A stretch of 64,000 nucleotides of DNA from Bugula neritina (GCA_964035545.1 OZ037766.1:27883673-27947672), one strand, 5' to 3'. Shown: positions 42 to 63,145, counted from the stretch's first letter. Made by a program: numbers and translations. The notes: generated from the sequence alone by a model not told the origin.

Positions 42-1959
42 TAAGGCATTTTCTTAAGGTAGGATAGTACACATAGCCAATGCAACAAACAATATTAGCT
101 TCTGGACAGGAGTTGTCTTCTACAATAGTGATGTACTCCTCATAGTATTCTGTTGTTGTTCTAAAACAGGGGACACAAGTTGTTTTAGAAGTGAGTAGAT
201 TTTAACATATACGTAGAAACTTTTTAGAAGTAATAGAATTGCAATTAGAAAGTCCCATGTCTATAGTTACTATTTTTTGCTATAACTACGATATTTTTCT
301 GTAACTTACTATTTTCTCACATATGATACTGTAACTCATTTAATAGGTTGATGCACATTTTTGTGAGGTTTCACGGTACTGCACAGAATTAATAAAAGGT
401 TAAGAATGGAAAACCGATATCTTTTCATGCAGCATCAATGCACCTTGGCTTCAAAGTTATCAATTCAAATCAAATAGAGTTTGAAAGTTTTTGAAAGTTC
501 TATAAATAGATGAACGTTTAGTAGAGATAAATTTCGTTATGTGAATATATTAATTAACTTTATATCGTCAACTAAAACTGTCTAATCTATGCACCCATAA
601 TTGTTTGACAATGTACAATGATAAAGTTTTACTGTAGTGTATGCCTGAAGAGCTTTTTAAAATATAGGGAGTAGCTTTGAATAGTGATACAGCTATAAAC
701 TGCTGTTGCATTTGCCTAAAATAACTTGTTACTATGAGATACTAAAATAACCTTACACTGTTGTGTTGAAAGCAGGAAAATAAAAGGGAATGCATTGGAT
801 ATGGCCTATAAGCCCACATACATAACGACCTCCTCTTTGTACGACTTTAGTTACTACTCTGGCTCGGACCTGTCAGCACAACACAGAATGAGCACAATAT
901 TGTATTACAAATTACAAAAATGTATTATGCAGCCAAATAGAAATATTTGTATATGTATAAAGTTCTGGCAGGCTCATATTTGGTCATCAATCTTAAAATT
1001 TAATGCTTGTTTACCATGGTTATAACCACAGAGCTTATTATTAAGTTTTTTTCATTAATTCAGGAAACATCTAAAATTTTAACCTTTCCTTGTATATGTA
1101 AAATTTAATAATAGAACTTGTAAACTTAAAAAACTCACCACTTTCTTTATGCGTGTAATTGTAGTTGGAGTTGTGCTACAACAGGTATTAGGGTTGTCTC
1201 CTCCCTGGACTGATCTTTTCACTATTTCACCACCATTTTCTAACAAGTCCTAAATATATATCAAAAAGAAAATTAGTTTAAATCTTCCCTGAAAGCGCTT
1301 TGATTGTGATAATTTTTAATTGAAAGACAAAATTTATTGAGGTAGATGCAGTGATGAAAACATTTGAAAAAACCCATGTTTGTAAATAAAAAAATATTGT
1401 AATAGAAGTTATGTTCTTGAAAGAGAGTTTTAACCCAAAGCTCGTAAAGACAATGTTAAAAAAGTTAGGCTGTTTAACTTTCTCTGTTCATGCACCTATT
1501 TGAGTCTAACACAAAATAATTAAATATAGCAAAAGTTTTAACAAATTGCATTTCTCTATTTTTATAGAAAATTTCCAGTACACTAGTTACCACATACACT
1601 GTGTTCTTGTAATTGACGAAATTGCAGTTGATTTTATACACATTTATAATACGTGTACATTTTGATTTGCGGTGTATTTTTACATAGTGTTATTATATGT
1701 GAAATGCTATAATAAAATATATTGGAGACAATTCTAATTCACTCACCAGTGCATGGATGCATTCATCAATCATGCTTTGTCTTTCTTCAGCAGAGAGCAG
1801 TGACAAGGCATACCGAGCTCCTGCATCTAGCAGATTCTCCCCATCTTCAGGTACAGCTATGCTGTCATTAAAGTCTTGTCTGTGGAGAGAACCCGGTTGT
1901 GGGATACCTCTGACACCCACAGCAAGTACTAGCAAGGTGATGACAGCTATGAGCTCCAT
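42..1959 (-). CDS. g1: secreted prepro-protein with EMI-like Cys-rich domain (3' partial, last exon outside the window)
   Basis: Exons 1959-1747, 1249-1139, 869-757, 160-42, all GT-AG, intron phases 0,0,2,1. Protein: MELIAVITLLVLAVGVRG (signal)...DECIHAL/DLLENGGEIVKR-SVQGGDNPNTCCSTTPTTITRIKKV/VRARVVTKVVQRGGRYVCGLIGHIQCIPFYFPAFNTTV/TTTEYYEEYITIVEDNSCPEANIVCCIGYVYYPTLRKCL. Supported by exon-by-exon paralogy with g2-g5. Confidence 0.9.
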
Positions 1960-2353
1960 GATCCGAACACCTGCAGTGGAATAAGAGAGTAGCAAAATCT
2001 TTGTTGTGTGTTAAGCTACAGAATTTATACACCAAAACAGGTCAAACAACAGGTAGTTCTATGTAAATATTATAACACACTATGCACGCAGATGCAACTC
2101 ATCAGATGTTAGACAACATACATATCTAAAGCATCATATAGACAACGTTGCTGTTAAATAAAATAACATTTTTTCATGCAAGTTTGTACCATATTTATAA
2201 TAATTATAAGAAAATAGTAAGTTTTAAAATAAAGTACTATGTACCTATATAGCAGCTTTCACAAGCTTTCAGCCTATAATATTGCTTTGATAGCTTGAGT
2301 GAAATGAAGGCTTTACACAGAAATTTAGACTACTAATAAAATTTCATATTTCT

Positions 2354-2410
2354 ACTCACTTCCTCCCAGTATGTAAAATGATCTTTGCCACTAGCTTTAG
2401 ATTATATAGT
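2354..2410 (-). promoter_or_regulatory. Putative TATA box and short non-coding first exon of g1
   Basis: The minus strand reads TATATAAT, then TCATT about 25 nt downstream, then a GTGAGT donor (2359-2354). A CAG acceptor at 1973-1971 lies just before the ATG. A similar TATA + short exon + donor layout is seen upstream of g2 (~10840-10915), g3 (~19370-19445), g4 (~24429-24517) and g5 (~36072-36160). Confidence 0.5.
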
Positions 2411-2707
2411 CTTCAACACAGCCTAATAAAAATGCAACATGATTGCTGTAATCTCTCACACAAATAAAGTCATCAAAAAGCATGTTTGCCAACTTTTTCC
2501 TCCTCAATAATCATGTGAAAAACCGCAATAAACAATTTAAATAATGTGTAGGTTGATGAAAGATTATAACAGTATAAATAAAGTTATACTAATTAATGGT
2601 TAGTTGGCCAAGCGGTGTTTTAGTATTCAAGTTGAACATCGTGATCTCTATATGTTAGGTCAACCAATGTTTTTGAGATTATTATTTGTCACTCTGACAT
2701 TATTTAC

Positions 2708-2887
2708 AATTTTCAAGCTTGATGCTCAGACTTAGTATCTATGATCACATTGGCTTTAGATTTTGGTGTCAACTTTTCTGTTAGGCATGGCATGCTATAG
2801 CATGCCATGCCTAACAGAAAAGTTGACACCAAAATCTAAAGCCAATGTGATCATAGATACTAAGTCTGAGCATCAAGCTTGAAAATT
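2708..2887. repeat. Perfect 180-bp palindrome with no spacer
   Basis: The 90-bp arms are exact reverse complements about the centre CATGCTA|TAGCATG (2797/2798); both ends are AATT. Confidence 0.95.
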
Positions 2888-3392
2888 CACTAGTAATGAC
2901 ATCTCTATGACATTTTCTATTCATACTTCCATATCAGATAAAATCACTGCTGTTTCCATTTTTCATTCCTGTTTTTCTGTGTTTGTTGCATTGTCACCAT
3001 CCACATTCAGTTGAAACTAATATTTGGCCTCATATAGTATTATGACTTAATGCACACATTACACCTGCATGGTGATCTCTTCCACACAATATTACTCTTT
3101 TACTCTCTTCTATGTGTTTAAACCTGCATATAATGTATATAGCCTGGGTTCTAAAGAGAAAATTGTTTTGTTCTCTATCGCATCTTCTTAACTTATGTGT
3201 TAAGGATTGGTAGAAAACAATTTGTCACATGTTTCCTATCCTATTCTTTGTGTGTCAATACTGTTGTCAGTGTTTTTTATCAGAACTGTTTAATTATATA
3301 GTTGGCCTGATAAGTACATTAACTTAACGGTGATTAAAGAATATGCATGCATAGATAATATACAAAGAAAACGCAATATAATTTATGCTGTA

Positions 3393-4721
3393 GGGGTAAC
3401 GGGGGGGGGGGGGGGGGGGGGGGGGGCACAACGGTCATAGGGGTACAAAAAGCCGGCCAAATTGTGAGAGAACTTATTGACTTAGAGTTGTGATTTTTTT
3501 TTCATAAAAAGATATTGACATAATTATTCAGCCCTTGTAGTTTCAACACTTGCGGAATATACGTGTTGAAAAGGCGAGCAAAAAACTGTTTTTACCTACT
3601 TTTTGTAAATTTTTTAGGATGTCGTTAAAGCTTTATAACTTTTTACACTCAAAGGCAAGAAGCCTAGATTTTACTAATATTGTTGCCATTGCTTGTTTCT
3701 ACATCGCTTAACTAGTATAACAGCAAACTATGAAATAAATTTTCCTTGAGGCACATTTATTTTCAATTTGGCCACATGGGGCACAATGGACCACGCTGAT
3801 TATTGCACCCTGATCACTGTTATTAGTCTGTTTGCCCAAAAAGTTGGTTGAAATGTTACTAAAATCTATAGATATATAGCCATTTCTGACCTTTTTGTAA
3901 AGTATCAAAGACATCATGGTAAGACTACAAAACTACAAGTTGAAGCTCCCTAATATATACATCTTGTGAGGTTAAAGCTTTGCCATTTTATACATAATAC
4001 AAAACACTCTGCTGTTGCTACTTGCTACTAGTAGATAGCCATGATATTTATTATATATTACACCATCGAGGGAATATACATGTATTTGACTAAAATAAAT
4101 TGTGATTTGCTCATTTGCTCCCCCCTCTCCCTTCCGTACTCCAGTCATAAACTTCAGCCATGCACCTTAGCTACAGTTCATAGAAAAAAGTCGACTTGCA
4201 ATTTTGTAGTACATGTTGCTAAAGTTGTTTTTTGATTAACGTTCTTCTGAGGTGAAAATAACAGAACATTTTTAGTTTTAAATAGTAATGATAATGGCAC
4301 TGCAGAACCGAGTGAGGTGCGTTTGATTTTGCCTTCCTCTGCTATCCGTAGGGGCACCAACTGTACAGCTAAAACATGAATCTTGCTGTAGATCTGAAAG
4401 AGTATCTTTATTTATTTGTAATATTAAATAAATAAAGATCAGATGTAACAAAATATGCAAAATTTCAATATATTTGTTGTGTCCCACCCAGTGGCCCATT
4501 GTACCCCGGTACCGGGGCACAATGGGCCAATTTTTTCGCCATAAAAATTTCATTATTCTGAAAGTTGCAAGAGAGATAGAAACAAAAAACTGGTACCTGT
4601 AATAGACAACAGATGCAGCATTAAGACCAGAGATTATTGAATTAGTAACTTGAAAAACAGACAAATGAGAGCAACAAATGCAAAATTCGGCCCGTTGTGC
4701 CCCCCCCCCACCCGTTACCCC
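3393..4721. mobile_element. Non-autonomous DNA transposon (MITE), Tc1/mariner-pogo-like
   Basis: TIRs GGGGTAACGGG(G)nCACAACGG ... CCGTTGTG(C)nACCCGTTACCCC, flanked by TA on both sides. Internal GGGGCACAATGG sub-repeats at ~3778 and ~4494-4527. No transposase ORF. Confidence 0.8.
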
Positions 4722-7700
4722 TATGGCACATTCTAAAAGATATTGCTACTCTTAGTATTTTAGTAACTTTACTTTAGTTGGAGTTTGTTTCATCTGCTTC
4801 TGGATATAACTGACATGTCTTATGCAAGCATTATGACAGTTCAAAGCTGATCGTCATCATCAATTCTCTTAGTTTCAGATTGACTGAACTATTAATTTAT
4901 AAATGTAAAAGATGATCTGATATATTTCAAACATTCGAGAGAAATTAAGATATATATTGTTATAACAACGTATACATACGCTAAATAGAAGCAAACTAGT
5001 TAAGGAATTTAAAATTGTTAATAAGAACATGTAGCCTAACATTTGCAATTATGAATGTATACTTTACAAAAGCCAAAGCTCATGATATTTATAATATTAA
5101 GCTGTATGTGTTTATTTATATTAACATAAATCAACATATTCCCTTCTTGCTTTAGTCTTTTCGACACGAGAAACAAGGTGAATTTTTATTTTGCTTTGCT
5201 TTATGAGAAGTGTTTTAAATATATTATAAAGCCAAACTTAATTGCACGACTCTATAGTTATATGTTAATGAATTTATTATTATTAATGCTTTGGCATAGC
5301 TCTAGAGTCTAGATTAAACAGTTAGTTTCTTCATTAAAATAAAATATTCATAACTGCCTACATAAAAGCTGTTTTTGTGAAAATGTGGTTAGCAAAATGC
5401 AAAATGATTTAAAACAATGTAAACAGTTAAACTGTTGTATGAACCTAATCATAAGTATATTTGGCATTTGCAAAATGAGTTGAGATGCATATAACATATC
5501 AGTTGTCATTCATTTCATCCATTCACTTTTGATACATCAGCTTTGAATTGGAGAAACACCAAATTGCAAATCATCAATTAATAAAATGTAAACAAATGAC
5601 AACATATGTGACCCACCACCACAAAACCAGGAACGTTTGTGAAATTGTGAAAATTGATTTGTATGTTCAATTATTGCTTTATATAAATGTGCCAAGTTCC
5701 TGGTTTTGTCAGTCGGGTCACATATTTAATTGATGATTAATATTGTTATTTATTTACTACAACCAAAGTGCAAAATTACAATCTGAATGTAGCCAGATGG
5801 TCATCTACTTAGTTGATTTGCCTTGTAAACTTAATCAACCACAACTGCATGGCTGGTGCTATACTCTCTTTTTCTGGTTTACATGCAACTTCCTTTTGTG
5901 GATAATTGATGAAATTTTCAATCATTTGACAAACTGCTTTTGGAGAGTTTTTTTCATGTTGCTTTGAAAAAATGATTTTTTTTTCTTAATGTATACGCTT
6001 CAAAAGAAATAATTTCCCTTATCAATAAGAATATATATCTGGCTGCAGTTACACACCTGCCAAAGTACAACTCTATAACAGAGAACACATTTCGCAATAT
6101 TAATTGATATATATATATATATTTGCTAGCTATCAAGAAGAAAAATTAATAAACGCTATCCATGATGCAATGACGATGTAGAAGTATATAAATGACATTG
6201 TTTTCAGAATTTATTTTAAAAAATCGATTTATTGGTGTAATACATATGTGATGAAATTCAATTTTATATGAAAAATTAAACAAAAGATCAAATTTTTTAT
6301 TTTGTTTTGAAAATGATTGAAGCAATAATTTCATCAGCTAATTTAACTTATATAGTCAGTTTTCTCAATGATAGCACTCATCAAAGGTTTTTAGTCTATT
6401 TAAGTAATGTGATTGTAAAATTAGAATAATGTTAACATTAAATTCAAGAGTAAAAGCTTTCTTACATTTAACATCATCAATGGTTTTGCTGCCAAAATAT
6501 ACAAATGTGCATGTAGACTGTCTGTGTTAGACTGGTTAATAGGTGTGTGATGGTGAACAGAAAGGACTTCATGATAAAATCTCTAATCTTACGTTATATA
6601 GTTGTAGCATGAGCATATGCCATTTCCTGTAAACATATGTGAGCAAAAGAATAACTGGTACCCATACTTGTGTACCACCGAAGACTACTCTACAAAACAA
6701 TTACTTTATGTTTAGCCCTAGTAGGTTATGTGTACCAGATCCGAAAGCATTCTCATGCCCAAGTATCTTTAAGGTTAAAAAGCATAACTAAAACAAGTTT
6801 AAACATTCTGCTAGAAATAATATCACAAAAATTAAATTAATATTTTGAACTTGTAACACCAGAACTACTATGTACTGCAGCTTGAGAGCTTCAAGGCTTT
6901 TAGATGCATGAATGGAGAGAAAAACTGAGAATCTAAAGTTCTCTAACCAATAATATAAATTTTGATAATAGAATTTCTATTTTTTATAAGTTGTTACATT
7001 AATTTTGCCTATTTAATAATATATGGCCTTAGAAAGTTGATGTGGCCCAATAGTTTTATGAGTATGTTCTTATCATATGCAATTATAGACAACAGCTTTT
7101 AAAAAGTAAATTCAGTATGACAAATGATCATATATGTTGGTTTTGAATTTATATAACGTAATTATATTAGCTGCTATACATATGAGCACACAGAGTTGGT
7201 CAACTAAAATTTATTTACCTTTCTAATCTTTGAATTATACATATTAATAGTTAAAAATTTAGCTCTCACACCGTATCTAGTATATAATTGTTATTGTGCA
7301 TTCACATATTATTATTATGTTATATCATGGTACAGAAAAAATTTCACTATAAGGACCAATTACTAAATCAATATTTATTGCATATAATATGCAATTTTTA
7401 TATTAGTCAATAAAACTTGAAATGAAAAACACCATTGCTTGGCAATTGTTAGTCATGGAGTGTACAACTTATACTTCTTTTTTTATTATACTTTGAAAAT
7501 TTTGTTTTAGTCAAGCTTTGCAAGTTTTTTACATTTTATTTTGAATAAAAACAGACATGACAACACATACAGGTCAAAATGTTGAATATAAATTTGTCTA
7601 TAAATGAGACTAATGTTAATAGAATGCACTAAAAATTCTCCTATCTTTCAAATATAACGTTATAAAAATATAGTTTAACTCAAAATATTCAATATTACAT

Positions 7701-7836: not shown

Positions 7837-10421
7837 TCATCCAGAAATAAGCGAGGTAAAATAGAGAACATCTCGATATTCTCTCATTAAACTCAGGTGC
7901 CTCTCTGCTTCTATAAAAGCTACAAACACACAACAAAAGCATAACTGTATTAAATATTTATAATAACATGAATGCGTATTTGTTGATGCGATAAAAATGT
8001 GCATGAACAGAATGTGAGAGTTATCTGCTATTCAACCTAGCTAGAATTTAAAAGGAAAACCTCATAAAAAGCATCATGTTAAATAATGATGGAAAGATTC
8101 TTGGACATTTAGAGCAATAATTTTACCACATTAGGTTCCATATAATGAAACTAAACTGCTAATGTTTTATTGCTGTCTCCAAATTGGTTTTACGACATTT
8201 TATTGCATAGCTTTTTCTTAAACCCACAACTATCATATTATGTTTTCATTTTTAAAATGTATTTCATGACACCAAATAGTATTTTTTTAATAATGACTAC
8301 CAAAACTATATTGCTGTAGACATTGTTTTTTAAAAAAGAATAATTTGCTATCTATAATACATGTAGTAGCTATAATAAATACTTACTAAGGCATTGTCTT
8401 AAGGTAGGATAGTACACATAGCCACTGCAACAAACAATATTAGCTTCTGGGCAGGAGTTGTCTTCTATAATAGTGATGTACTCCTCATAGTACTCTGTTG
8501 TTGTGCTAAAACAGAAGACTCAAAATATTTTGTTTTACAAAGAGTATGCTTCAACATATTCCAAATTATGCGAGTATTTTTTCTTTTAACAAACTGCAAA
8601 TTTTATTTTATATTTTGTAAGTATAATTCTAACTATGCTATATTTGCAATCCTGTTATAGCTTCTGGTTATAGAGTGTTGGTTTTTCTTGAACCTGATAA
8701 ACTATATTTTGATTTGATGTTAAAGCTTTAGTAAATATATATTTATTACCCAAAGTTATTAGTTAATTTATAAATCAACTTAAACTCTCTAATGTAAAAC
8801 CTTATGATCGTTTAACAATGTACAATGGTTAAAGTTGTATCACTGTGTAGGACAGCCTAAGCTATAGCTGATTTAAAATAGCTATTAGGTTTGAATACTG
8901 TTAGATGAATACTGTTGCTTTTGCAGTAAATAATTATATGCAATAAAACAATCTTACATGGTTTCGGTAAATGGAGAAATGCATCTGAATGCGCCCATAA
9001 ACCCACATACATAACGACCTCCTCTTTGTACGACTTTAGTTACTATTCTGGCTCGAACCTGTCAGCACAACACATAGAGCACAATGTAGTATAACAAGTT
9101 GCAAAAATGTATAATGCAACCAAATAAAAGCATTTTTTGTGTATATAAAGCTTTGGCAGGTTCATATTTGGTCACCTCACTCGAAATGGTGCTGTTATAA
9201 TGAAAATTATAATCACAGATTGAGCTCATCAACAAGTTCTGTTATCAAAAAGCATTTGAAATTTCCACTAATATTTGTATGTAAAATGCAAAACTAAAAA
9301 CTGTAACTTTTAAAAAGCTCACCAATTTTCGTCTGCGTGTAATTGTAGTTGGAGTTGTGCTACAACAGAAATTAGAGTTGCCTCCACCCTGAACAGATCT
9401 TTTCACTATTTCACCACCATTTTCTAACAAGTCCTAAATATATATCAAGAAGAAAATGAAAACAATGCAAAACTACTTAAATGACAAACTATACATTTTC
9501 CCAAATCTCCACAGTGCTCACTGCTTATGAGTTTAAGTCAACAAAATTGAAAACACTCTTAGCTTCTACCAAAGGTAATCGTTTGAACTAAAAAATAAAC
9601 TTTGCTGTAATTGTTGCTACATCATCAGGTGATCAGTAATGGTGCAAGGTGCTATCATATGTATTATTGTAGCCAGTTTACATGTGTGCAGCACAACATT
9701 CTATGCTTACAATGTTTTCTAAGACAGTTTAGGTTCATGAAATACAGAGAAGCTGTTATTAGATGTTTCTCTTTTAATTTGGAAAAATACATCTAAATTT
9801 TCAAATAACATAATGAGAACACTTCTCATTATATTATTATTTGAAAATTTAGATGTATTTTTCCAAATGTCATAATCTAATGATATGGTTGATACTTTAA
9901 AGGACTCAAATCCTCTGTGATTACATATCCTGATATATCATGATATGCATGCATAACACAGATAAACTGCACTAGCTACTTGCATCACCATGCCACAATT
10001 CAGTCAAGATCGACACACAAAAAATCTTAATATATCTATACAAATACAGCAGAACTGATTTTAAAGAAAAGTTGCAGTTGACTTATTTTGCATAGATTTT
10101 GATTCTTTATATGCATATACACATTGTCATATGTAGTATATTTTATGCAGATCATATTATGAGAAATGCCATAATAAAATATATTTGAGGCAATTCTAGT
10201 TCACTTACCAGTGCATGGATGCATTCATCAATTATGCTTTGTCTTTCTTCAGCAGAGAGCAGTGACAAGGCATACCGAGCTCCTGCATCTAGCAGATTCT
10301 CCCCATCTTCAGGCACAGAAATGCTGTCATTAAAGTCTTGTCTGTGGAGAGAACCCGGTTGTGGGATACCTCTGACACCCACAGCAAGTACTAGCAAGGT
10401 GATGACAGCTATGAGATCCAT
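7837..10421 (-). CDS. g2: secreted prepro-protein with EMI-like domain, 208 aa, complete
   Basis: Exons 10421-10209, 9433-9323, 9058-8958, 8505-8387, 7919-7837 (627 nt, open frame, TGA stop). Contains IVKR-S, NFCCSTT, YVCGFMGAFRC, CPEANIVCCSGY; tail TFIEAERHLSLMREYRDVLYFTSLISG*. Confidence 0.9.
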
Positions 10422-17183: not shown

Positions 17184-19115
17184 TCATAGAGCGCCTAATA
17201 AGTAGAGAGTATCTTGATATTCTCTCAATAAACTAAGGATGTTCTCCAGTTGTATAAGAGCTAAAACATATAACAATAACAACGTAGATTAAAAAGCATT
17301 TCCAAAATTATCTTAAAGGTCAAGATTGATGCAAAGTAATATAACAAACTGCTGCATGAAAACTCAATTCTGATATACTGTAAGGCTGAAGTTTTGATTA
17401 ATAATAGCAACTAAGCTATTGAAAGAGTAATCGATGTCTATAGAATTTAAAAACTTTTTCACCAGTTTTCATTATATGAGCCTCTTTTATTATATCGCAA
17501 ATACAGCTATATTGACTGTAATGTTTTATTATGCATGCTAGCTGTCTTATAGATTCAAAATAAAGTTTATAGATGGCTATTGACATACTTAGACATTGCC
17601 TAAAGTAATGGTAGTACACGTATCCGTTGCAGCAGACGACATTAGCATCGGGGCACTCTGGGTCCACCTCAATATAGTTGTAGTCTACATAATATTCTGT
17701 TGTAGTTCTGAAGTGAATAAACATGTAGTTCATTATGCAGTAGCCAAAAAAGACTCAAAGAAACTTTGAGTTTTTCTGTAACAATCAGCATTTAAGGAAT
17801 ACTAAATTATACATAAATATGCTATAGAGTTTATTAACTCTGCAGTTTAGAAAGACAAATATTAAAATATATACTAAAATTTGCACAACAATTTAATAAT
17901 AAAAAGGTAACAAATAGTATGCTATGTAACATTTGTCTTACACAACACGAGGCGATCTAGAAGAGCATCTGCGTGTTCCAAATAGTCCGCATTTATAACG
18001 TTTTCCGACATAAACAGTCTTCCTTATGGTCCTAGCCCGAATCTATCAAAAATATATTTGCGGTTTTTTTATTATCGGCTCTACAACAATGAAATGTTAT
18101 AATAACAATGTACTATAAATAATATGATTTATTGCAATGCAATATATTAATATAATTTATACTGTCTATAACATAAAGCTGCTATAGTCAGCAACATGTT
18201 ATAAAACAGGTTTGTCTGGTAAAGATACATGCATACCTTTTCATGCAAATTTGTACCAAATATAAAAGCATATACATTTACTACTTTCAAAGCGACAATT
18301 GTATTCACCAGTAATTATATAAATACTAAATTTGTTGATAAAAAATTGTTTTAAAATTCTAATTAAATATTCAACTATATTTTGAAATTACTAAGGTGAG
18401 TCAGATTAGACGACAACTTTAAAGTTTTTCTAAACTCACCACTCTCTCTCTACGTACTATACCAACAGTGAGAGTCTTGTTACAGCAGAACTGAGAATTG
18501 TCTCTCTCATAGATTGACCTTTTAGATATTCTATTGCCTTTCAGCATGTCCTAAAATATATATAATACAATTATACAAACCAATGTTATTGTCAACAAAA
18601 ATAACCGTCAGATATTTTAGTTTATGATCAATTTAATTATGATTTGCAGATAGTAAAAATTTTAATACTGTTACATAGATTATTATTCAGCTCGATGTCA
18701 AAACAGATTGATTGTAATATATAATGGCTATTTTTCTTATAAGATAGAATACAGGATTTAATGCATGAAATTTTATGCAAAGTTAAATTAGGGTAAAACA
18801 AAAAAATGCTCAATATGTCATTTGAAATTCTATAACTTCAACTTAACTAACTACACAGTTATTGTTAACTAAAGTAAAAATTACAGAATATAATCAAAAT
18901 ACCAGTGCTTGAACACACTCATCAATCATGCTTTGCTTTTCATCAGCAGAAAGCAGTGACAAGGCATTTTCAGTTTCCCAACTCAGCAAAGTTCCATTAT
19001 CTCCAGGGACAGGTATGCTCTCATTCTAGTCTTGTGTGTGGGAAGAGTCCAGCTGTGGTAGACTTTTGACACCCGCAACAAGTGCTACTAAGGTAATGAC
19101 GGTTATGATCTTCAT
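17184..19115 (-). pseudogene. g3: family paralog with a single premature TAG at codon 30 (null allele or young pseudogene)
   Basis: Exons 19115-18903, 18550-18440, 18042-17942, 17707-17589, 17260-17184, with splice sites and frame intact. TAG at 19028-19026 where g1/g2 have TTT. Downstream: ISKR-SIYERDNSQFCCNKT, YKCGLFGTRRC, CPDANVVCCNGY, tail TLIQLENILSLLREYQDTLYLLGAL*. Confidence 0.85.
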
Positions 19116-34281: not shown

Positions 34282-35936
34282 TTAATACCACCCCAACTCA
34301 TGCAGAGCAGCGAGTAAATCAAGGTTGTCTCTAATTTGTTGCAACACTCTTTCTGCTTGTTCATAAGCTGCAAAATAGTACTACAAAATTAAAATCAATC
34401 ACTTTACATAGATTTAAAAGCTTGCATACAGTGGAAACTATATTCTCATCACAGTGAAAACATAATTATGCTGTATTTTGGTAGCCTGTCTTTTGGACAG
34501 TATATTTGATTAGTAAATAGTCTTCCTACTCGTGTGTAAACACATTGGTAGCTATAATATTATTGTTTTTTTTGCTATGTGCGTGCTGTACAATCACAAG
34601 CATTATTTAAAAAATTCTATTCAACTAAAGTATTGAATTTATTAAGTAGAGTAATAAATGATGTTTACACTTACTTAGGCAATTTCTAGCTGGTGGATAC
34701 CAAATATAACCGTTACAGCATACAACATTAACGTTTGGGCATTCGCCATCTTCTACAATGTAGTTGTAGTCTAAATAGTACTCTGTTGTTGTCCTGTAAT
34801 AAAAAATAAAGTGTATCAAAAAACTAAAGTATAAATATTCTTTTAGATAGTTTTTTTAAAGAAAAAACTACACAAATTGACTCTATGTAATTTATATTTT
34901 GGTTGTATGCATATGTATGGCACTTGAAAGTTTTTTGACTACTCAGTGTAATTTTCACAGCACAAATACAGCATTTTTTGGCTGATGTATTATTATGACT
35001 TACACTTTTTCATTTCTTTTGGATGTGCACCTCTTCCACCCAAGAAAGCCACATTTAACAGAATTACCTTGTTCAACATACTTGTCAACAATTCTAGCTC
35101 GAACCTGTCAATGAAATATAAATGATGGAGCTGTCTTAGAAATTGATAAATATTGCAAATATGCATACATTTACTATGCATCAAGGCTGCATTCCGAGCT
35201 ATGTGTAGTAAAAAAAAAAATTGTAGAAAATATAAACAAAATGTGACTTACACATTAATTGTCTCTAAAATACTAATTTGTCCAGGTGCAGCAGCTTTCA
35301 TGCTTTATGCTTGGTAAATGATAATACAGGGCATGCAATTAGCAGAACAAACTCACCACTTCTTGTTTTAGATGAACATTAGCAATTGTTTTGTTGCAGC
35401 AGAATTGAGTATTGTTTCTATCTAAATCATTATTGATTATTGATCTTTTTTTTCGAATTTTGCCTTGCAACTGTGCCTAAAAATAAGAATAGTTGAAAGA
35501 TGCAATATAATTTGTATGTGGTTTAGTATTATATGTTGATATGCTACAAAAATTAAATAAAAACAAAAACAAGCAATTTCTTAAAAAAGCTGTGTAATAA
35601 TTTATTTTAAATAAACAAATGAAAAACCAAAATATTGAAATGGCAAAATATTGAAATATTCATTATCTGTTATGTTATACATTGACTACTGATAAAATGT
35701 GCTGTAACAAACAAAACAAAGCTTACCAATGATTTGACGCACTCATTAATAATTTCCTCTGTTTTCTCTTTTGAAAGCAGTGACAAAGCAAAACGAGTTC
35801 CTGCGCTTATGTAATTACCATCTGGTTTTGGTGTAGAAAACCGGCTGATATACCAGCTTCGAGAAAGATACTCTTCTGCATTACCTTGAGCACCAAAGAT
35901 TACTACCAAAGCTAGAGTTATGATTGCCACCTTCAT
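34282..35936 (-). CDS. g5: secreted prepro-protein with EMI-like domain, 211 aa, complete
   Basis: Exons 35936-35727, 35476-35357, 35104-35004, 34793-34675, 34367-34282 (636 nt, TAA stop). MKVAIITLALVVIFGAQG signal, NECVKSL, RKKR-SII, QFCCNKT, KCGFLGWKRCT, CPNVNVVCCNGY; tail TYEQAERVLQQIRDNLDLLAALHELGWY*. Confidence 0.9.
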
Positions 35937-41058: not shown

Positions 41059-42764
<1,706 letters not shown>

Positions 42765-54930: not shown

Positions 54931-57900
54931 ATGGCGTTGTTGGAGAGAGTGACACAGATGGGTAAAGACCTTGGGTTGGTGGAGGACAAGCTCATAGCTT
55001 TTGTTGAAAAGAACCTACCCATTGTTGCTGCACAAGAAGAAAAAGAAAAGGACCGAGAGGAACGTAGATTAGAGCGTGAGGCAGAAAAGATCAGGCAAGA
55101 GAATGAGAAAGCCTTAATGGAGATCAAGATAAAAGCTGATCAGGAGGCAATGGCATTCAAGGTTAAAGCTGATCAGGAGGCAATGGCACTCAAGGTTAAA
55201 GCTGACCAGGAGGCAGAAGAGAGAAGACAACGACATGAATTAGATATGGAAAAGCTGAAAGCTGACACAAGTTTGGAGCACTCAAGACATGAGAGCACCA
55301 GGTTAGAAATAGCTAACAAACCAAAACCAAAAATACCATTCTTTGATGAGAAGGTGGACGAAATGGATAGCTATTTAGAGCGGTTCGAGTGGGTTGCCGA
55401 AGGATGTAACTGGGACAAGGGAGATTGGCCCTACCATCTCAGTCAGTACCTAAGGGGTACAGCAACAGAAGCTTACATCCGGTTATCACCTACCGACCGT
55501 AGAGATTATAAAAAAGTCAAAGAAGCCTTGTTGGAGCGCTTTAACTTGACTCAAGAGGGCTACAGAAAAAAGCTCAGAGAGGCAGAAGCTTACGAAGATG
55601 AAACTCCTGCCCAACTATTCACTAGGATAGAAACTTATGTGCACAAGTGGGTAGAACTTTCAGGGGGCATGGACATAGCCAAACTAGTGGCGACTGAACA
55701 ATTTATATCATCATGCCCAGACGACCTAGCTGTGCATTTAAAGCAAAGTTCTTACAACAGCAGTGAGGATATGTGTGATGCAGCGTCACTGTTTTTGCAC
55801 GCCCGTGGAAGAAAACTAGCAAAGACTAAGAAAACTAATATAAAAAGGATGGAAAACACACCCACCGGTAGCATGAATGCTGAACAAGGAAGTAAAAGCG
55901 ATGGGGCATGCTTCATCTGCAAAGATAAGTCACACATTGCTCGTAACTGCCCACGGCGAGGGAAGAAGTACTGTTCACATTGCAAGATGAACAACCACAA
56001 TACTTCAGACTGCAGAAAGTATGGTGGAAGGTCAGTGCATGCTGCTGCTGCAATAGCGACTACTCCGAATAAGACTGTGGTCACAGATCCAGGAATCTCA
56101 TCTAAAGTGGAAGAACCTACGGAAATCACAGTTAATGGTAAAAAGTTTGTCAACGCTGCTGTCTGCAAGAATGGACCTAAATTCAAAGATGGGGGCACAG
56201 CGATATTTGATGCGGAAGTCAATGGCCAACGAGCTACTGTAATGCGCGACACCGGCTGTGGTTGCATTGTAGTCAATGCAAAGTATGTGCAACCTCAACA
56301 TTTAACTGGAGAATCAGTTTATCTGAATATGGCTGATGCAAGTGTTAGAGAGGCTCAATGGGCACTTATCTCAGTACGCTCACCATTTTACAATGGTGTC
56401 GTCAAAGCTGCAGTAATGGACAAGACGATTTGTGACCTGCTTATTGGGAATGTGGATGGAGCGAGATCAGCTGACCAGCCCCTGGAAAACTGGAAGGACT
56501 GCGCCGTAACCACAAGAGCTCAAGCTGTCAAGGAGAAGTCAGGAGACAAACCACTGATGATTGATTCAAATGCTAACCCATTAAGTATAGGGAAAGATGA
56601 AATAGCCAGACTGCAGAGGGATGACCCCACATTGGAGCGTTTCTTCGATGCAAAGGAAGTGAAGGAGAAAAAGGGATGCACCACTAGGTTTGTGGTGAGG
56701 AATAAGATTCTGTACCGTGAGTACACCGACTCGAAGTCTGTCAGTGTAAAACCTGTTAAACAACTCATGGTACCCAGTTCTCTGAGGAAGGAAGTTCTAC
56801 AGAAAGCTCATGACTGCATAATGAGCGGACACCTAGGAGTAAAGAAAACCACTGATAGAGTACTTTCCAACTTCTTCTGGCCAGGACTAAACGGAGATGT
56901 CGTACGTTTCTGTCAATCATGTGACATTTGCCAGAAGACGGTGAAAAAAGGCTCAGTCATGAAAGTTCCAGTACAGGAAACTCCACTAATTGACACCCCA
57001 TTCAAGAGATGTGCAATAGACCTAATCGGACCAATTAACCCTCCAAGTGAGAAAGGACACCGCTACATCCTAACTTTAGTTGACTATGCTACAAGATATC
57101 CTGAAGCTACACCATTAAAGAACATTGACTCAGCTACTGTAGCTGAAGCGCTGCTTGACATATACAGTCGTGTTGGGATACCAGAGGAGGTGATAAGCGA
57201 TCAAGGAACTCAATTTATCTCGGACTACATGAAAGAGTTTACCAGATTACTTGACATGCGACAACTTCCTACCTCACCATACCATGCAATGGCCAATGGA
57301 CTTGTGGAAAAGTTCAACGGAACCCTCAAGAGTATGTTAAAAAAGTTGTGTGCTAAAGAGCCAAGACAGTGGCATCGGTTCATCAATGCGGCTCTATTTG
57401 CATATAGAGAAGTCCCACAGGAATCAACAGGCTTCGCCCCATTCGAGTTACTCTATGGAAGAACTGTGCGTGGACCAATGTACATCCTGCGACAACTTTG
57501 GACAAAAGAAGACACTGCCGATGAAGTCAAGACCTGCTATCAACATGTTTTTGAATTGAGAGAGCGTTTAGATGACATGATGGAAATGGCACTAGCTTCG
57601 CTAAAAGACAGTCAAAAAAGATACAAACACTATTTTGACAAGAAAGCTAAGCAGAGAGACTTCAAATCTGGTGACAAAGTGCTCATTCTTCTACCTACGG
57701 ATGGAAATAAATTGCTGATGCATTGGCAAGGACCATTCAATATTGAGGAGAAAGTCAGACTGAATGACTACATTATCAACATTAGAGGCAAGAGGAGAAC
57801 ATACCATGCCAACATGCTGAAGAAATATTTTGAGCGGGAGACGCCTACCGACTCTATGACTGGAGCTGTGAGGACTCTAGATGCTGCTGGTGCTGGAATT

Positions 57901-58047
57901 ATTGATTACGATAAGGAAAGAGAAGGCGAAGATGATTTGTTGGATCTGTACAATAAGAAACAACAGAGTGATGAGATGGGATATGTATTCACAAAACTTC
58001 AGGATCAAGGTGGAGTCAATCAAAGGAAAGGACAATGTTGGAGCTGA
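54931..58047 (+). CDS. Gag-protease-integrase polyprotein (1038 aa) of the Gmr1-type element
   Basis: N-terminal coiled coil; SCAN-like capsid (DYKKVKEALLERF...EQFISSCP); two zinc knuckles (CFICKDKSHIARNC, CSHCKMNNHNTSDC); aspartic protease RDTG; integrase HHCC (AH...GHLG...CDIC) and DDE core (IDLIGP, SDQG, GLVEKFNGTLK). No YxDD RT motif. Confidence 0.93.
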   Translation: MALLERVTQMGKDLGLVEDKLIAFVEKNLPIVAAQEEKEKDREERRLEREAEKIRQENEKALMEIKIKADQEAMAFKVKADQEAMALKVKADQEAEERRQRHELDMEKLKADTSLEHSRHESTRLEIANKPKPKIPFFDEKVDEMDSYLERFEWVAEGCNWDKGDWPYHLSQYLRGTATEAYIRLSPTDRRDYKKVKEALLERFNLTQEGYRKKLREAEAYEDETPAQLFTRIETYVHKWVELSGGMDIAKLVATEQFISSCPDDLAVHLKQSSYNSSEDMCDAASLFLHARGRKLAKTKKTNIKRMENTPTGSMNAEQGSKSDGACFICKDKSHIARNCPRRGKKYCSHCKMNNHNTSDCRKYGGRSVHAAAAIATTPNKTVVTDPGISSKVEEPTEITVNGKKFVNAAVCKNGPKFKDGGTAIFDAEVNGQRATVMRDTGCGCIVVNAKYVQPQHLTGESVYLNMADASVREAQWALISVRSPFYNGVVKAAVMDKTICDLLIGNVDGARSADQPLENWKDCAVTTRAQAVKEKSGDKPLMIDSNANPLSIGKDEIARLQRDDPTLERFFDAKEVKEKKGCTTRFVVRNKILYREYTDSKSVSVKPVKQLMVPSSLRKEVLQKAHDCIMSGHLGVKKTTDRVLSNFFWPGLNGDVVRFCQSCDICQKTVKKGSVMKVPVQETPLIDTPFKRCAIDLIGPINPPSEKGHRYILTLVDYATRYPEATPLKNIDSATVAEALLDIYSRVGIPEEVISDQGTQFISDYMKEFTRLLDMRQLPTSPYHAMANGLVEKFNGTLKSMLKKLCAKEPRQWHRFINAALFAYREVPQESTGFAPFELLYGRTVRGPMYILRQLWTKEDTADEVKTCYQHVFELRERLDDMMEMALASLKDSQKRYKHYFDKKAKQRDFKSGDKVLILLPTDGNKLLMHWQGPFNIEEKVRLNDYIINIRGKRRTYHANMLKKYFERETPTDSMTGAVRTLDAAGAGIIDYDKEREGEDDLLDLYNKKQQSDEMGYVFTKLQDQGGVNQRKGQCWS

Positions 58048-59437: not shown

Positions 59438-62400
59438 TTAAAACAGGTTATCGAGGATGCGTTCAAACTTGTCAATATCTACAAGCATTCAGTGTATAAT
59501 AACATACAATTTAACTGCCTGCAATAATTATAGAATGTGTCATAATAGCAGTTCAGAGAAAAATTTATTTAAGTAAAATTTATTGTAATACATAACGTTA
59601 GAAAATGTTTAATTAGTAATTTTGTGACATATTTTTACTTTTTTAAAAATTTGATGTAAAATTCAAATTAATTTTCATGTTTCTTTTTATTATAAAGGTT
59701 TGATTGTTTCAAATTTTTTGTCTGTAATGATGATGATGAAGTTGAGATATTAAATTAATAAAATATGTTAAGTACATTCATAAATTAATAAGAGTGTTGA
59801 TAATTTTACTAAAATTGTAGATTTGCTGCATATAAAAAAGAGAATTGATTGCCGATATTCATTCCTTATTGTGGTGTGCGCTATATTCACCTGTGCAAAA
59901 GATAGTCACTCAACTATAGCGATAGGAACAAAAGGTGATTTTTTCCTTTGCATCATAACAAATTTTTGTAAATCATTAATTTCCCTTTGTTTTAAGCTAC
60001 TGGGAAAAGTTTAACTATAATCTATAGCATCAAATTTACCAACGGAACACTAATTGAATTATACTCATAAACTTTGAAAGATGCAAATAATAATTTTAGT
60101 TGTGAAATCATACCCAATTGTCATGGTATGATTTTAGAATTACAAAATAAACTGCAAAATTTGTCTAAGACTTGATTATACTATAACATACATACGTTTA
60201 TCGAATAAGAGTACATATAGTAATAAAATGACATAGAAATAGAAACATTCTGAACACATGCAATTACTAAATCGAAACTGTGGAAACATCTAATATAAAT
60301 GCGAGTCTGTCCAATTCAAATAACATGCAGACATAACATTTTATAGAACCTTTATGACTTAAAACATCCTGCTTTTTAATGCAATATTTTTTTTAACAAT
60401 AAACAATTCAGATTTTAAACATTAGTAAAATAGCAAGCTGAAAGTTTTAGCAAATAAAAATCCCACATTTGCAGATATAATAAAGGAATAGTATTATGTT
60501 TTTGCAAGTAATATACTAGGCAATGACTGCTGTTTATGTGGATGAGTTTCTAAAAGAGCATAAAGTGTCAAAAAATACAAAACAACTTATAAACCTTTGA
60601 ATTAACTCACCAACGCATGCATCAAGGTACGGAAACCAAAAGTAACCGCGGCAACAGCTTTTAAGTTCTTCCGGACAAAGTTGAGGCTTTGAAAAGTAAG
60701 TGATATCAGTTCGGTAGCAATCAGAGGGCCTAAAAATGTAAAACGTTTTAAATAAAAATTTAGCTAAATATTGTTGTTGATTAATAAAAAGTTTATATTC
60801 TGGATGATAATGCATGTTTAGTGGTTTGAAAGTTTCAAGGGACAAATCATTCAATTGTCAGTTTGGCTCAACATTTTTTGGTTTAATGTGATTACTATGA
60901 TTTGTTTTTAAAAATTAGGTAAATGATGTAATTCAAAATTAATTTCATTCTAATAGACAAAACTGAAATTAACGTGCATATACTGTGAAATAAATTGTAT
61001 GCAGAAGCAAAGTGTCGTTCTTCACGTCTGAATCAAAACAGATAACATTTTTTGTGGATTGAGCATGTAAAAACTTTTAAATGACACAGGATGTTGCAAA
61101 ACTACAGGTAAAGATGTTACTAGTCACATTAGATTTTAATAACGTACTTTGATACAGTTCGAAATCTGGTGCATCGACTCCATCTAAAAAGTCCACAACC
61201 TGTATGATATTTCTCTGAGCGGTAAGTTGTGCAGCTGTACATTACTGTACTTGTTTTCTCCTCAATAAGTGGAGGGAGAATAACTTTACAGCAAGACTTT
61301 TCTTTGTCAATACCTTTATAAAATATCGGAGGTTTCCCTAAGCCAACCTCCCCTTCCTTATCTGTCTCCTCCTCCCACCCAAATGGTTTTTTAAGGCTTG
61401 AAGAAAACCTAAAGTCAATAGAATTATAATATATATTTTATATATATTGGTCATTTTACTTGATTTATTAGTACACACTAGAAATCGCCAGTTTTTACCT
61501 ATGTTTTACAATTTAGCTGCTAATGAACATGTGTTTTTGCCCAAAACCAGTAGAATATGAATCAACACAGCCAAATAATCAAAGTTCTTCTTAACTTTGC
61601 TTGGTTTCCCATGTTTTTTTCTTTATTATTCAGCTACTTTTGATTGCGGAGTGTTATGATTGTTTCAGATATATATTATATGATACATGCAACAACATTG
61701 CAAGCAAATAATTATTATTATTACTAACCACAGAAATTCTTTTTAGTATAAATAAAAAAATAATATGACAACATTATCAAGCACTTAATTTTTACAGGTC
61801 AACAAATGTTTTTAGTAGTAAATAATTAAACTTGCACTGAATTTGTATACTATTGTTTCTAACAGTATACACATTATCTTTATATTCAAAAATGCAAGTT
61901 GGTAAGTTTCATCTCTAACAGTTGTTTTCAAAAACTTTACTTACTTTATATGGCCAAGTGGTCTTGCTTGGGGTTGTGTTGAATTTCTGGATAGTTGCTC
62001 GACTCGACTTTCATATTTTGCCTATAACAATAATAAATGAAAACAGAAGTGAAAATGAACAGATTAATCGTGGCTTTTTTATAGTTTCAACTTTTTAAGC
62101 CCAATATAACTAATATTGTCACTTTTTGAACTTATATTATATAAAAAAAATTAATATCCGTAGCATCTGCAAATGATCAGGTTTTTGAGTTGCCAAGGTT
62201 TAATTTTTCAAAATTTCAACATAATATATAAAGTCTTATCGTGCTATTAGAACAGTGTCAATAAGTTAGGTTTTACATTTTTGCATGCTACTTGTTTCAT
62301 ACGTATTTGAATCCATTAGTATATATAATGCATAATGAGTTTTTTGAAGTTAATATAAACTATAGCTAATACCCTAGCCAAGTTATTAGATTATGCCTAA

Positions 62401-63145
62401 TTGTTTCATAGTATTATATAATTTAATAAGAATACTTAAATAGAGTACTTATAAAGAAAGAAATTAATACAGTTTACAAGACAATAATTTTCATTCGATA
62501 AGCTTTGAATTTATTTTAACCAACCTAAAGAAAATGGTACTAATTCTCATGCAATGATTGAAACACTCCATTAAAAAGAATGTGTATGTTCCTTAGAGGT
62601 TTTTTGCACAAAAATGCTTTTCACAGTCTCATTAACATGATGAAGGCACCCAACAAGTACATGAGTAAGCTTAAATTAAAACTCATTCTGGCTGATCTAA
62701 ATTTGCAGTTTTCTTCAACATTTACGGTAGGTACTCATATTCATATTAAGCTCTATCAAATTGCCCATTAAGTGTATGTACCAAATATAACAATTATAGA
62801 AAACTTTCACATTTTTGATCAAACATCATAGGTCTTAATTTCTAAAAAGACAGCTACATGCATTTAAAATTTTCTAGTTTATTATGTATAGCTTGTTTAT
62901 ATATATATTTTTGGTAACCAACAAAAAATTCAACAATTTTCCTTCTAATTCAAAAATAGAGCTTCAAATCCTCATACCATGCCTTCAGGTGATGGGTCAG
63001 TAGCAAAAAAGTTGTCAATTTTCTTTAGCATAGCCTCTCCTCTCTCGTTATAGCTTTGAATTTCTTTATCAACAACATAATTTTCATTGGCCATAGAATG
63101 TGCCAGTATAAATGAGGCAAGCAAAAATAAGCTTAGTTTAGTCAT
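59438..63145 (-). CDS. g7: secreted family member with the most canonical EMI-like domain, ~221 aa
   Basis: Exons 63145-62978, 62021-61945, 61408-61148, 60729-60611, 59478-59438; phases 0,2,2,1; open 666-nt frame; AATAAA ~40 nt after the TAA. MTKLSLFLLASFILAHSMA signal; KSCCKV...YSCTTYRSEKYHTGCGLFRWSRCTRFRTVSKPSDCYRTDITYFSKPQLCPEELKSCCRGYFWFPYLDACV/DIDKFERILDNLF*. The last exon and a possible extra pro-region exon are less certain. Confidence 0.8.

What the first reader, a model, noticed from the sequence alone, without database searches (positions are those of the whole stretch)
42..63145. Hidden tandem cluster of at least 7 secreted, stand-alone EMI-like prepro-proteins
Seen: seven spliced gene models plus one relic exon. 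They share a signal peptide, the Cys scaffold CC..C..C..CP-x5-CCxG[YF]..C, an invariant 119-nt exon (phase 2 in, phase 1 out) and a C-terminal helix-like exon. Established: CCxGY preceded by a C-x7-C loop and Tyr/Thr/Arg-rich strands is typical of EMI domains (EMILIN/multimerin, CED-1/Draper/MEGF10, Nimrod), where EMI normally heads a large multidomain protein. Inference: here the domain appears to be packaged alone like a hormone, toxin or effector precursor, and the family is expanding with gene birth and death. I do not recognise it as a named family. Possible roles are immune or self-recognition ligand, adhesive or matrix protein, or toxin.
Basis: partly seen in the sequence, partly recalled or inferred. 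Interest (0 to 1): 0.9.

Follow-up and report, generated by a model that had tools for sequence, protein, structure and literature searches.

The report
Bryozoan cluster of secreted cysteine-rich protein genes
This stretch of a bryozoan (Bugula-like) chromosome holds a row of real but uncharacterised genes for small secreted proteins that are probably cut from a precursor; their likeness to the EMI domain could not be confirmed, and what they do is unknown.

Summary
The observation largely holds. Seven copies of a 119-nt exon with AG/GT borders and one shared phase lie in the window; shuffled sequence gives none. Two more lie just upstream, so the array has nine genes in about 75 kb.

Five genes (A-E) have five exons: signal peptide, propeptide (acidic in four of the five), dibasic cleavage site, an 8-Cys domain of about 100 aa and a helical tail. 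F has four exons and no cleavage site. C carries an in-frame stop. G's 5' and 3' ends do not close. No relic exon was found.

Independent annotations in Bugula neritina (EB796_014539) and Watersipora subatra match the splice models. Exons are better conserved than introns, with dN/dS about 0.37. No RNA data exist.

The EMI reading is not demonstrated. Pfam EMI, PDB sequence searches and fold searches with a pLDDT-74 model gave nothing. Only language-model look-alikes point to EMI/Nimrod-type proteins and to unnamed mollusc and rotifer clusters.

Best reading: an orphan bryozoan family of secreted, convertase-processed beta-hairpin proteins, probably defence or signalling ligands.

The scan noted this family before, in the adjacent window (s1-475877). 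An EMI-like gene noted on another piece (s1-487308) may belong to it.

The parts
42..1959 (-). Gene A (last exon lies before the window start). Exons: 1747-1959 (signal peptide + propeptide), 1139-1249 (K-R site + CC), 757-869 (C-x7-C loop; 113 nt, 12 nt longer than in B-E), 42-160 (119-nt exon).
   Evidence: Its orthologue in B. neritina contig L012 has the same exon lengths and splice sites.
7837..10421 (-). Gene B, complete, 208 aa. Exons: 10209-10421, 9323-9433, 8958-9058, 8387-8505, 7837-7919.
   Evidence: 90% identical to P0001 (B. neritina EB796_014539), with no gaps at any of the four junctions. dN/dS 0.37 against that orthologue.
17184..19115 (-). Gene C. Exons: 18903-19115, 18440-18550, 17942-18042, 17589-17707, 17184-17260. 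In-frame stop in exon 1 at 19026-19028, so it is a candidate pseudogene.
   Evidence: The window stretch about 16625-19869 corresponds to only 175 bp in the B. neritina contig L012.
24812..26576 (+). Gene D, complete, 213 aa. Exons: 24812-25033, 25687-25794, 25943-26043, 26230-26348, 26485-26576. R-P-K-R site.
34282..35936 (-). Gene E, complete, 211 aa. Exons: 35727-35936, 35357-35476, 35004-35104, 34675-34793, 34282-34367. R-K-K-R site.
41059..42764 (+). Gene F, divergent, 178 aa, four exons: 41059-41216, 41722-41904 (fused CC + loop exon), 42392-42510 (119 nt), 42688-42764. No dibasic cleavage site before the CC.
60494..63145 (-). Gene G, divergent, 10 Cys. Firm exons: 61148-61408 (fused CC + loop exon) and 60611-60729 (119 nt). 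The proposed first exon 62978-63145 does not join in frame, and the last exon 60494-60549 is a guess.

Best explanation
The window holds seven of nine tandem paralogues of a lineage-restricted gene family. By sequence the family is found only in cheilostome bryozoans. The genes encode small secreted proteins. In the main subfamily (A-E) the product is a prepro-protein. It has a signal peptide, then a propeptide of about 60 aa (acidic in A-D, basic in E) with one Cys. A proprotein-convertase-type dibasic site follows. The released part is about 125 aa and mostly basic. It consists of an 8-Cys domain and a C-terminal amphipathic helix. In the model the 8-Cys domain is one very long beta-hairpin whose tip is stapled by the C-x7-C disulfide, set on a small Cys-rich base that carries CC-x-G-[YF]. 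Shown: the genes, their exon structure, conservation and purifying selection, and the secretory and cleavage motifs. Inferred: cleavage by a furin-like enzyme in the secretory pathway and action outside the cell as a binding protein. My preferred function, at about 35-40%, is a host-defence or recognition effector (opsonin-like or antimicrobial). This fits the acidic propeptide paired with a basic mature part in four of the five, the tandem expansion with turnover, and the fast-diverging hairpin tip. A remote relationship to EMI/Nimrod-type CC-x-G-Y modules is possible but not demonstrated.
For: The motif and the 119-nt exon occur 7 times against 0 in shuffles. Frame-closing models with canonical splice sites exist for A-F. 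An independent annotation, P0001 (B. neritina), matches gene B junction for junction. P0007 (W. subatra) has the same five-exon layout. The B. neritina contig L012 is collinear at 85-88% nucleotide identity. Exons are 92-96% identical and introns 83-90%. dN/dS is 0.37-0.38, and 0.24 for the mature part of B. The whole genome has 9 clustered copies plus a distant paralogue 4.8 Mb away with the same intron phases. The N-termini are hydrophobic, the K-R or R-x-K-R site is conserved, propeptide pI is about 4.3-4.7 and mature pI 8.1-8.9 in four of five, and the tails are amphipathic. The AlphaFold2 model of P0001:106-231 has mean pLDDT 74.4, with strands at 20-43 and 49-72, a small sheet at 82-99 and a helix at 100-124.
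Against: There is no RNA or protein evidence at all. The two database proteins are computational annotations. Signal peptide and cleavage rest on simple heuristics, not on SignalP or experiment. The model's pTM is only 0.36 and its alignment is shallow, with 2-7 rows over the N-terminal half, so the extended hairpin may be an artefact. The loop divergence between A and its orthologue raises dS as well as dN (omega 0.54), so positive selection is not shown. Gene E reverses the charge pattern, and F lacks the cleavage site. Nothing bears directly on function.
Confidence: 0.6

Rival explanations
1. The mature domain is a true, very divergent EMI domain of EMILIN/MEGF10/Draper/Nimrod type. It has become a free-standing, propeptide-bearing secreted module that binds microbes, apoptotic cells or matrix partners, as the N-terminal CC-x-G-Y regions of those receptors do.
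For: CC-x-G-[YF] is invariant, preceded by a C-x7-C loop and by strands rich in Tyr, Thr and Arg. The best named families in the ESM-Atlas feature search are EGF_PEAR1L/EMI families (0.76-0.77). Most of the ten shape rows for P0007 are EMI- or EGF-domain proteins such as EGFL7/8 and MEGF10/11. The core of P0001 is nearest a STAB2 N-terminal fragment (0.83). In F, G and the distant paralogue the domain is encoded by two exons, as EMI is in EMILIN1 (PMC3342094).
Against: PF07546 gives no hit at E<=10 on exons or on full-length relatives. No EMI protein appears in PDB sequence searches. No structural match was found: best Z is 3.3, and Foldseek E-values are 0.8 or worse. The family has 8 Cys rather than 7, lacks the W-R before CC, and has 8 residues instead of xGxx before the last Cys. 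All Atlas scores for named families are below the tool's 0.9 'lead only' line.
Confidence: 0.3
2. The proteins are hormone- or cytokine-like signalling ligands. Like other prodomain-assisted, furin-released ligands, they would be cut from a precursor and act on a receptor, and the paralogues would serve different tissues or life stages.
For: The architecture is prepro with a conserved dibasic site. The mature part is under purifying selection (omega 0.24). The gene structure is conserved from Bugula to Watersipora. A single-copy distant paralogue exists elsewhere on the chromosome.
Against: There are no cystine-knot signatures (no C-x-G-x-C or C-x-C ring) and no hit to any hormone or cytokine family in Pfam. 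Nine clustered copies with a pseudogene and presence/absence variation are more typical of effector families. No receptor or expression data exist.
Confidence: 0.22
3. The proteins are structural components: adhesive, cuticle, or skeletal or organic-matrix proteins of the zooid wall or the larval attachment apparatus.
For: They are secreted, Cys-rich, and rich in Tyr and Thr, and they are multi-copy. Bryozoans secrete cuticle and adhesives. These points are inference only; the composition comes.
Against: There are no low-complexity or repeat regions, and the size is small. A processed propeptide and a well-conserved globular scaffold are unusual for bulk matrix proteins. No data bear on this directly.
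Confidence: 0.1
4. The array is not functional: decaying copies or chance open frames that gene predictors happened to annotate.
For: C has an in-frame stop, G does not close, and there is no RNA evidence.
Against: Five complete open models have canonical splice sites. Exons are more conserved than introns, and dN/dS is about 0.37 between species. Intron positions are conserved between bryozoan families. The motif count is 7 against 0 in shuffles.
Confidence: 0.03

Closest known systems
EMI domain (Pfam PF07546; EMILIN/multimerin, EGFL7/8, MEGF10/11, CED-1/Draper)
   Same: A Cys-rich extracellular module of about 80-95 aa. It has a short Cys-Cys loop in the middle, strands rich in Tyr, Thr and Arg, and a CC-x-G-[YF] motif close to its end followed by one more Cys. 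In some family members it is encoded by two exons.
   Different: No profile match. Eight Cys, starting with an adjacent CC, instead of seven. No W-R before the CC, and 8 residues instead of xGxx before the last Cys. An extra CP Cys. It does not head a multidomain protein: it stands alone behind a cleavable propeptide and is followed only by a short helix.
Nimrod superfamily (NimB, NimC, Eater; N-terminal CCxGY motif plus NIM repeats; PMC4073527)
   Same: A signal peptide and a CC-x-G-Y motif. Genes lie in clusters. Some members (NimB) are secreted. The family has an immune-recognition role, which is the function I favour by analogy.
   Different: There are no NIM/EGF-like repeats at all, and these define that superfamily. 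The family here also has a propeptide and a C-terminal helix that Nimrod proteins lack.
Precursors of cationic host-defence peptides and other convertase-processed secreted proteins
   Same: Signal peptide, acidic propiece, dibasic site and a basic disulfide-rich mature part in four of the five; tandem gene arrays with turnover.
   Different: The mature part is far larger (about 125 aa) than typical defence peptides. It shows no sequence or fold match to any known class, and no activity is known.
Hypothetical protein EB796_014539 (Bugula neritina) and an uncharacterized protein of Watersipora subatra
   Same: True family members. The first is the orthologue of gene B (90% identity). The second is 32-41% identical to genes A-E and to P0001, and has the same five-exon structure.
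   Different: They are computational annotations without name, domain or function. The B. neritina model carries a 22-aa N-terminal extension that is probably an artefact.

Membership tests
EMI domain (PF07546) | Significant match to the curated EMI profile | tested here: not met
   No EMI hit at E<=10 for any exon peptide, for P0001 or P0007, or for the distant paralogue's exons. The six-frame search of the whole genome with PF07546 does not touch this cluster.
EMI domain (PF07546) | Seven regularly spaced Cys in about 80 aa (PMC3342094) | tested here: not met
   Eight Cys (CC, C, C, C, CC, C) over 87-94 aa in A-E, P0001 and P0007. G has ten.
EMI domain (PF07546) | C-terminal consensus WRCCPG(Y/F)xGxxC (PMC3342094) | tested here: not met
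   Only CC-x-G-[YF] is kept. The residues before the CC are mostly V/A/I rather than W-R, and the last Cys follows after 6-8 residues rather than 4.
EMI domain (PF07546) | Sits at the N-terminus of a larger multidomain extracellular protein | tested here: not met
   Complete models are 178-213 aa: signal peptide, propeptide, one Cys domain, one helix. P0001 and P0007 are the same.
EMI domain (PF07546) | EMI fold | tested here: inconclusive
   The AF2 models (pLDDT 58.8 and 74.4) match nothing in PDB or the Atlas. The Atlas's own low-confidence model of P0007 has EMI-bearing proteins among its neighbours at TM 0.17-0.25.
Nimrod superfamily | CCxGY motif followed by NIM (EGF-like) repeats (PMC4073527) | tested here: not met
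   CC-x-G-Y is present. No further Cys repeats follow, and no significant EGF-type Pfam hit was found; the only trace is EGF_Tme5 at E 0.11 on one exon.
Convertase-processed secreted precursors (functional class) | N-terminal signal peptide | tested here: met
   Met followed by a hydrophobic stretch of 10 or more residues (mean Kyte-Doolittle 3.0-3.4) in A-F. This is a heuristic; SignalP was not available.
Convertase-processed secreted precursors (functional class) | Conserved dibasic (R-x-K/R-R or K-R) site between the propeptide and the mature domain | tested here: met
   Present at the same aligned position in A-E, P0001 and P0007; absent in F. Actual cleavage is not testable here.
Cystine-knot growth factors / ICK toxins | Knot signatures (C-x-G-x-C plus C-x-C ring; or the six-Cys ICK spacing) | tested here: not met
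   The motifs are absent from the alignment. The only PDB sequence trace is Jingzhaotoxin-VII at E 0.62 over 24 residues.

The most novel reading that the evidence does not exclude
The family is the bryozoan branch of a spiralian-wide group of free-standing, propeptide-bearing CC-x-G-Y modules. The unnamed mollusc and rotifer clusters found by the Atlas would be its relatives. These modules would be remote kin of EMI/Nimrod N-terminal domains, that is, the recognition head of CED-1/Draper/Eater-type receptors living as an independent secreted, convertase-activated opsonin or cytokine. The long charge-paired beta-hairpin with a variable, disulfide-stapled tip would be the binding surface.
Probability: 0.2. 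Interest if true: 0.6.

Novelty: new variant of a known kind. Interest (0 to 1): 0.36.

Why it matters
Bryozoans are among the least studied animal phyla at the molecular level, and almost nothing is known of their secreted signalling or defence proteins. This is a well-defined gene family that has expanded in tandem. It has a clear precursor architecture and no detectable relatives outside the phylum. It gives a concrete set of candidates for immunity, allorecognition, settlement or signalling studies in Bugula, an important fouling organism and the source of the bryostatins. If the remote link to EMI/Nimrod modules were proven, it would show that this recognition module can exist and evolve as a free-standing processed ligand. 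If not, it is one more lineage-specific Cys-rich secreted family, which is common in invertebrate genomes.

Tried and rejected
RNA evidence. The look-up of sequencing runs returned one run, which holds 97% of the words of an 8.6-kb stretch including introns, so it is DNA and probably the source assembly.

Joined products. Joined (spliced) proteins were never sent to a search, fold or complex tool. Remote searches used single exons by reference, or the database proteins P0001 and P0007. Spliced translations were built only inside local scripts, for alignment, composition and dN/dS.

Wider homologues. The profile of nine exon-4 peptides against 1.84 billion representatives found only bryozoan sequences, plus spurious repeat proteins such as bacterial CBM_14-like CPxGYxWH repeats. 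Three word-index searches found nothing outside bryozoans.

Pfam. Nothing was found on exons or on full-length proteins.

EMI in the genome. The six-frame search with PF07546 gave one spurious 18.8-bit hit elsewhere, so no genuine bryozoan EMI sequence was available for a profile-profile comparison.

PDB sequence searches gave nothing significant.

Fold searches. The first AF2 model was too poor. The second matched only long beta-hairpins of pore-forming toxins at E of about 1 and Z of 3.3 or less, which I read as geometry and not kinship.

Homodimer. The prediction for the mature part gave no verdict, so it is not evidence either way.

Alignments. MAFFT repeatedly misplaced short exon fragments. 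The alignments used for folding therefore carry only the fragments that aligned correctly, plus one partly misaligned row in A10.

Positive selection at the C-x7-C loop is not shown (omega 0.54 with raised dS).

Relic exon: not found.

Literature: no paper mentions EB796_014539 or links bryozoans with EMI.


Full report
WHAT IS THERE

The window is AT-rich animal DNA, about 30% G+C. Earlier notes of the scan call the genome a bryozoan. I confirmed that independently. A Bugula neritina contig (L012, assembly GCA_010799875.2) is collinear with window positions 1-12,700 at 85-88% nucleotide identity. The window therefore comes from a close relative of B. neritina.

A regex over the six-frame translation finds seven matches to CP-x(4-6)-CC-x-G-[YFW]; 200 shuffles give none. 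Each match lies in an exon of exactly 119 nt. The exon is bounded by AG and GT, with one leading and one trailing base of split codons. The seven exons are:
- A, 42-160, minus strand
- B, 8387-8505, minus strand
- C, 17589-17707, minus strand
- D, 26230-26348, plus strand
- E, 34675-34793, minus strand
- F, 42392-42510, plus strand
- G, 60611-60729, minus strand

A six-frame profile search of the whole 216-Mb assembly finds these seven plus two more, 5.9 and 11.3 kb before the window start, and none elsewhere at E<=0.01. The array therefore has nine genes in about 75 kb. Neighbouring 119-nt exons are 5.4-9.2 kb apart. The one exception is an 18-kb gap before G, which holds a 3.5-kb satellite and a retroelement-like ORF.

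GENE MODELS

I looked for stop-free segments shared between copies and listed all AG/GT sites with their phases. This gave models whose frames close to a stop codon for B, C, D, E and F, and for A up to the window edge.

A-E have five exons:
1. A first exon of 210-222 nt with the start codon, a hydrophobic signal sequence and most of a propeptide.
2. A second exon of 108-120 nt with the end of the propeptide, a dibasic site (K-R, R-P-K-R or R-K-K-R) and the first CC.
3. A third exon of 101 nt (113 nt in A) with a basic strand and the C-x7-C loop.
4. The 119-nt exon.
5. A last exon of 77-92 nt.

The intron phases are 0, 0, 2 and 1 in all five. F has the second and third exons fused and no dibasic site.

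Three problems remain. C has an in-frame stop in exon 1 (19026-19028). G's proposed first exon cannot be joined in frame to its CC exon. G's last exon is a guess. I found no relic exon with protein or nucleotide HMMs of the five exon types.

ARE THE GENES REAL?

No RNA run is available, so the support is comparative.

- A profile of the nine exon-4 peptides, searched against 1.84 billion representative proteins, returned two full-length proteins.
- P0001 is hypothetical protein EB796_014539 of B. neritina. It is 90% identical to my model of gene B and aligns without a gap across all four junctions.
- P0007 is an uncharacterized protein of Watersipora subatra. It is 32-41% identical to genes A-E and to P0001, and it maps to its own locus (L011) as five exons broken at the same places.
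- In L012 the orthologues of A and B keep exon lengths and AG/GT sites. Exons are 92-96% identical (82% for exon 3 of A) and introns 83-90%.
- dN/dS is 0.37-0.38 overall and 0.24 for the mature part of B.
- Another member lies on an unnamed metagenome contig (L024).
- A distant paralogue lies 4.8 Mb away on the same chromosome (L023). Its two Cys-domain exons have the same phases, 2 in and 1 out.

These are real, selected coding genes. Transcription itself is still unseen.

THE PROTEIN

- The first exon starts with Met and a hydrophobic stretch (mean Kyte-Doolittle 3.0-3.4).
- The propeptide is acidic (pI 4.3-4.7) in four of five genes and holds one Cys.
- The part after the dibasic site is 124-130 aa. 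It has eight Cys and a pI of 8.1-8.9 in four of five.
- Conserved blocks are the CC after a short N-terminal tail, a basic V-R-A-R-type strand, the C-G-[FL]-x-G-x3-C loop, a T-T-T-E-Y-Y strand, CP-x5-CC-x-G-[YF]-x8-C, and an amphipathic tail.

AlphaFold2 on P0001:106-231, with an alignment made only of database proteins and single exons by reference (A10), gave mean pLDDT 74.4 and pTM 0.36. The model has a very long hairpin (strands 20-43 and 49-72) with the C-x7-C loop at its tip. A small sheet (82-99) carries the CC-x-G-Y part, and a helix spans 100-124. The basic first strand pairs with the acidic, Tyr/Thr-rich second strand.

The alignment is shallow, so the topology is provisional.

IS IT AN EMI DOMAIN?

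[quoted passage not shown] The Nimrod literature adds CCxGY followed by NIM repeats (PMC4073527).

The results were as follows.
- The Pfam EMI profile hits nothing, neither exons nor P0001 or P0007, at E<=10.
- PDB sequence searches with P0007 and with the family profile find no EMI protein. The best trace is an ICK toxin over the CC-x-G-Y stretch at E 0.62.
- Foldseek against PDB, VIA-align against 48,000 chains and the Atlas shape search give nothing significant. The best Z is 3.3, and the Foldseek hits are hairpins of pore-forming toxins at E of about 1.
- Only CC-x-G-[YF] and the short mid-domain loop fit the signature. The Cys count, the residues before the CC, the spacing to the last Cys and the domain context do not.

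In favour there are leads only.
- The ESM-Atlas feature search puts unnamed small secreted proteins of molluscs and rotifers nearest to P0007 (0.90-0.91, 181 shared features).
- EGF_PEAR1L/EMI families follow at 0.76-0.77.
- Most of the Atlas shape neighbours of its own low-confidence model are EMI- or EGF-domain proteins such as EGFL7/8 and MEGF10/11, at TM 0.17-0.25.
- The core of P0001 is nearest a STAB2 N-terminal fragment (0.83).

I could not obtain a genuine EMI sequence by reference for a profile-profile test, because the genome search with PF07546 gave only a spurious hit. My estimate that this is a remote EMI relative is about 30%. It should not be filed as an EMI-domain family.

HOW IT PROBABLY WORKS

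Shown: the secretory and cleavage motifs, the conserved disulfide scaffold, purifying selection and the tandem array.

Inferred: entry into the secretory pathway, folding with the help of the propeptide, cleavage by a furin-like convertase, and release of a basic, disulfide-rich beta-hairpin protein with an amphipathic helix that acts outside the cell.

I favour a defence or recognition role at about 35-40%, for these reasons:
- The acidic propeptide with a basic mature part resembles the layout of defence-peptide precursors.
- The family is a local expansion with old (32-52% identity) and young (A/B, 87%) duplicates.
- One member has a stop codon.
- Gene C is missing at the syntenic place in B. 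neritina.
- The hairpin tip is the most divergent part between A and B, and between A and its orthologue.

That divergence raises synonymous change too (omega 0.54), so positive selection is not shown.

A hormone- or cytokine-like role (about 22%) fits the precursor layout and the conservation. A structural role (about 10%) cannot be excluded. A homodimer prediction returned no verdict and is not used.

NOVELTY AND SCORE

The family is already present in public annotation, but only as hypothetical or uncharacterized proteins. No paper mentions it. As a kind of thing it is familiar: a lineage-specific, tandemly expanded family of secreted, processed Cys-rich proteins. The scaffold itself matches no curated family. 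I rate it a new variant of a known kind, with moderate interest.

Noticed in passing
window 43387-46932: A 20-bp satellite of about 182 copies (70% matches) with strong strand asymmetry (GC skew -0.21, AT skew +0.21 over 44-48 kb). It lies just downstream of gene F, and its translation gives long repetitive open frames on the minus strand.
   Followed up: partly
window 54931-58047 (+): An uninterrupted 1038-aa ORF with a SCAN-like (retroviral capsid-type) region, an integrase zinc-binding domain and an integrase core (rve). No reverse transcriptase hit was found. It looks like a retroelement-derived gene or part of an LTR element, sitting in the 18-kb gap between genes F and G. Described only.
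   Followed up: partly
window about 16625-19869, against L012:2128-2303: The 3.2-kb stretch that holds the whole of gene C (the copy with the in-frame stop) corresponds to only 175 bp in the collinear B. neritina contig. This is a presence/absence difference between close relatives. A C-like exon-4 ORF (P0002) does exist in other public data.
   Followed up: partly
G000:C2:32777965-32778919 (L023:4966-5138 and 5813-5919, +): A distant single paralogue 4.8 Mb from the cluster. One exon carries CC...C-x7-C and ends in phase 2. A 107-nt exon carries YY...CC-x-G-F-x6-C, with phase 2 in and 1 out. It may or may not be the gene noted as s1-487308.
   Followed up: partly
window exon 3 against exon 4 of genes A-E (e.g. 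8958-9058 and 8387-8505): MAFFT repeatedly aligned the V-C-G-[FL]-x-G...C stretch of exon 3 onto the V-C-C-x-G-Y...C stretch of exon 4. Each is preceded by a long strand, which may hint at an ancient internal duplication of a strand-plus-loop unit.
   Followed up: no
window 29079-29770, 30519-31164 and about 37776-38441: Copies of a 354-bp repeat unit (83-92% identical in tandem pairs; 70-81% between the copy downstream of gene D and the one upstream of gene F). It is an interspersed element between the genes.
   Followed up: no
P0001 residues 1-22 (L012, upstream of 6088): The B. neritina annotation starts 22 codons before the Met that begins the signal peptide in all window paralogues. The extension is probably an annotation artefact.
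   Followed up: no
window 20599-20960 and 31496-32466: Long (AC)n/(TG)n microsatellites of 360 and 970 bp lie between the genes. (TA)n tracts at 42145-42342 sit inside the last-but-one intron of gene F, and others lie at the window end, 63613-64000.
   Followed up: no
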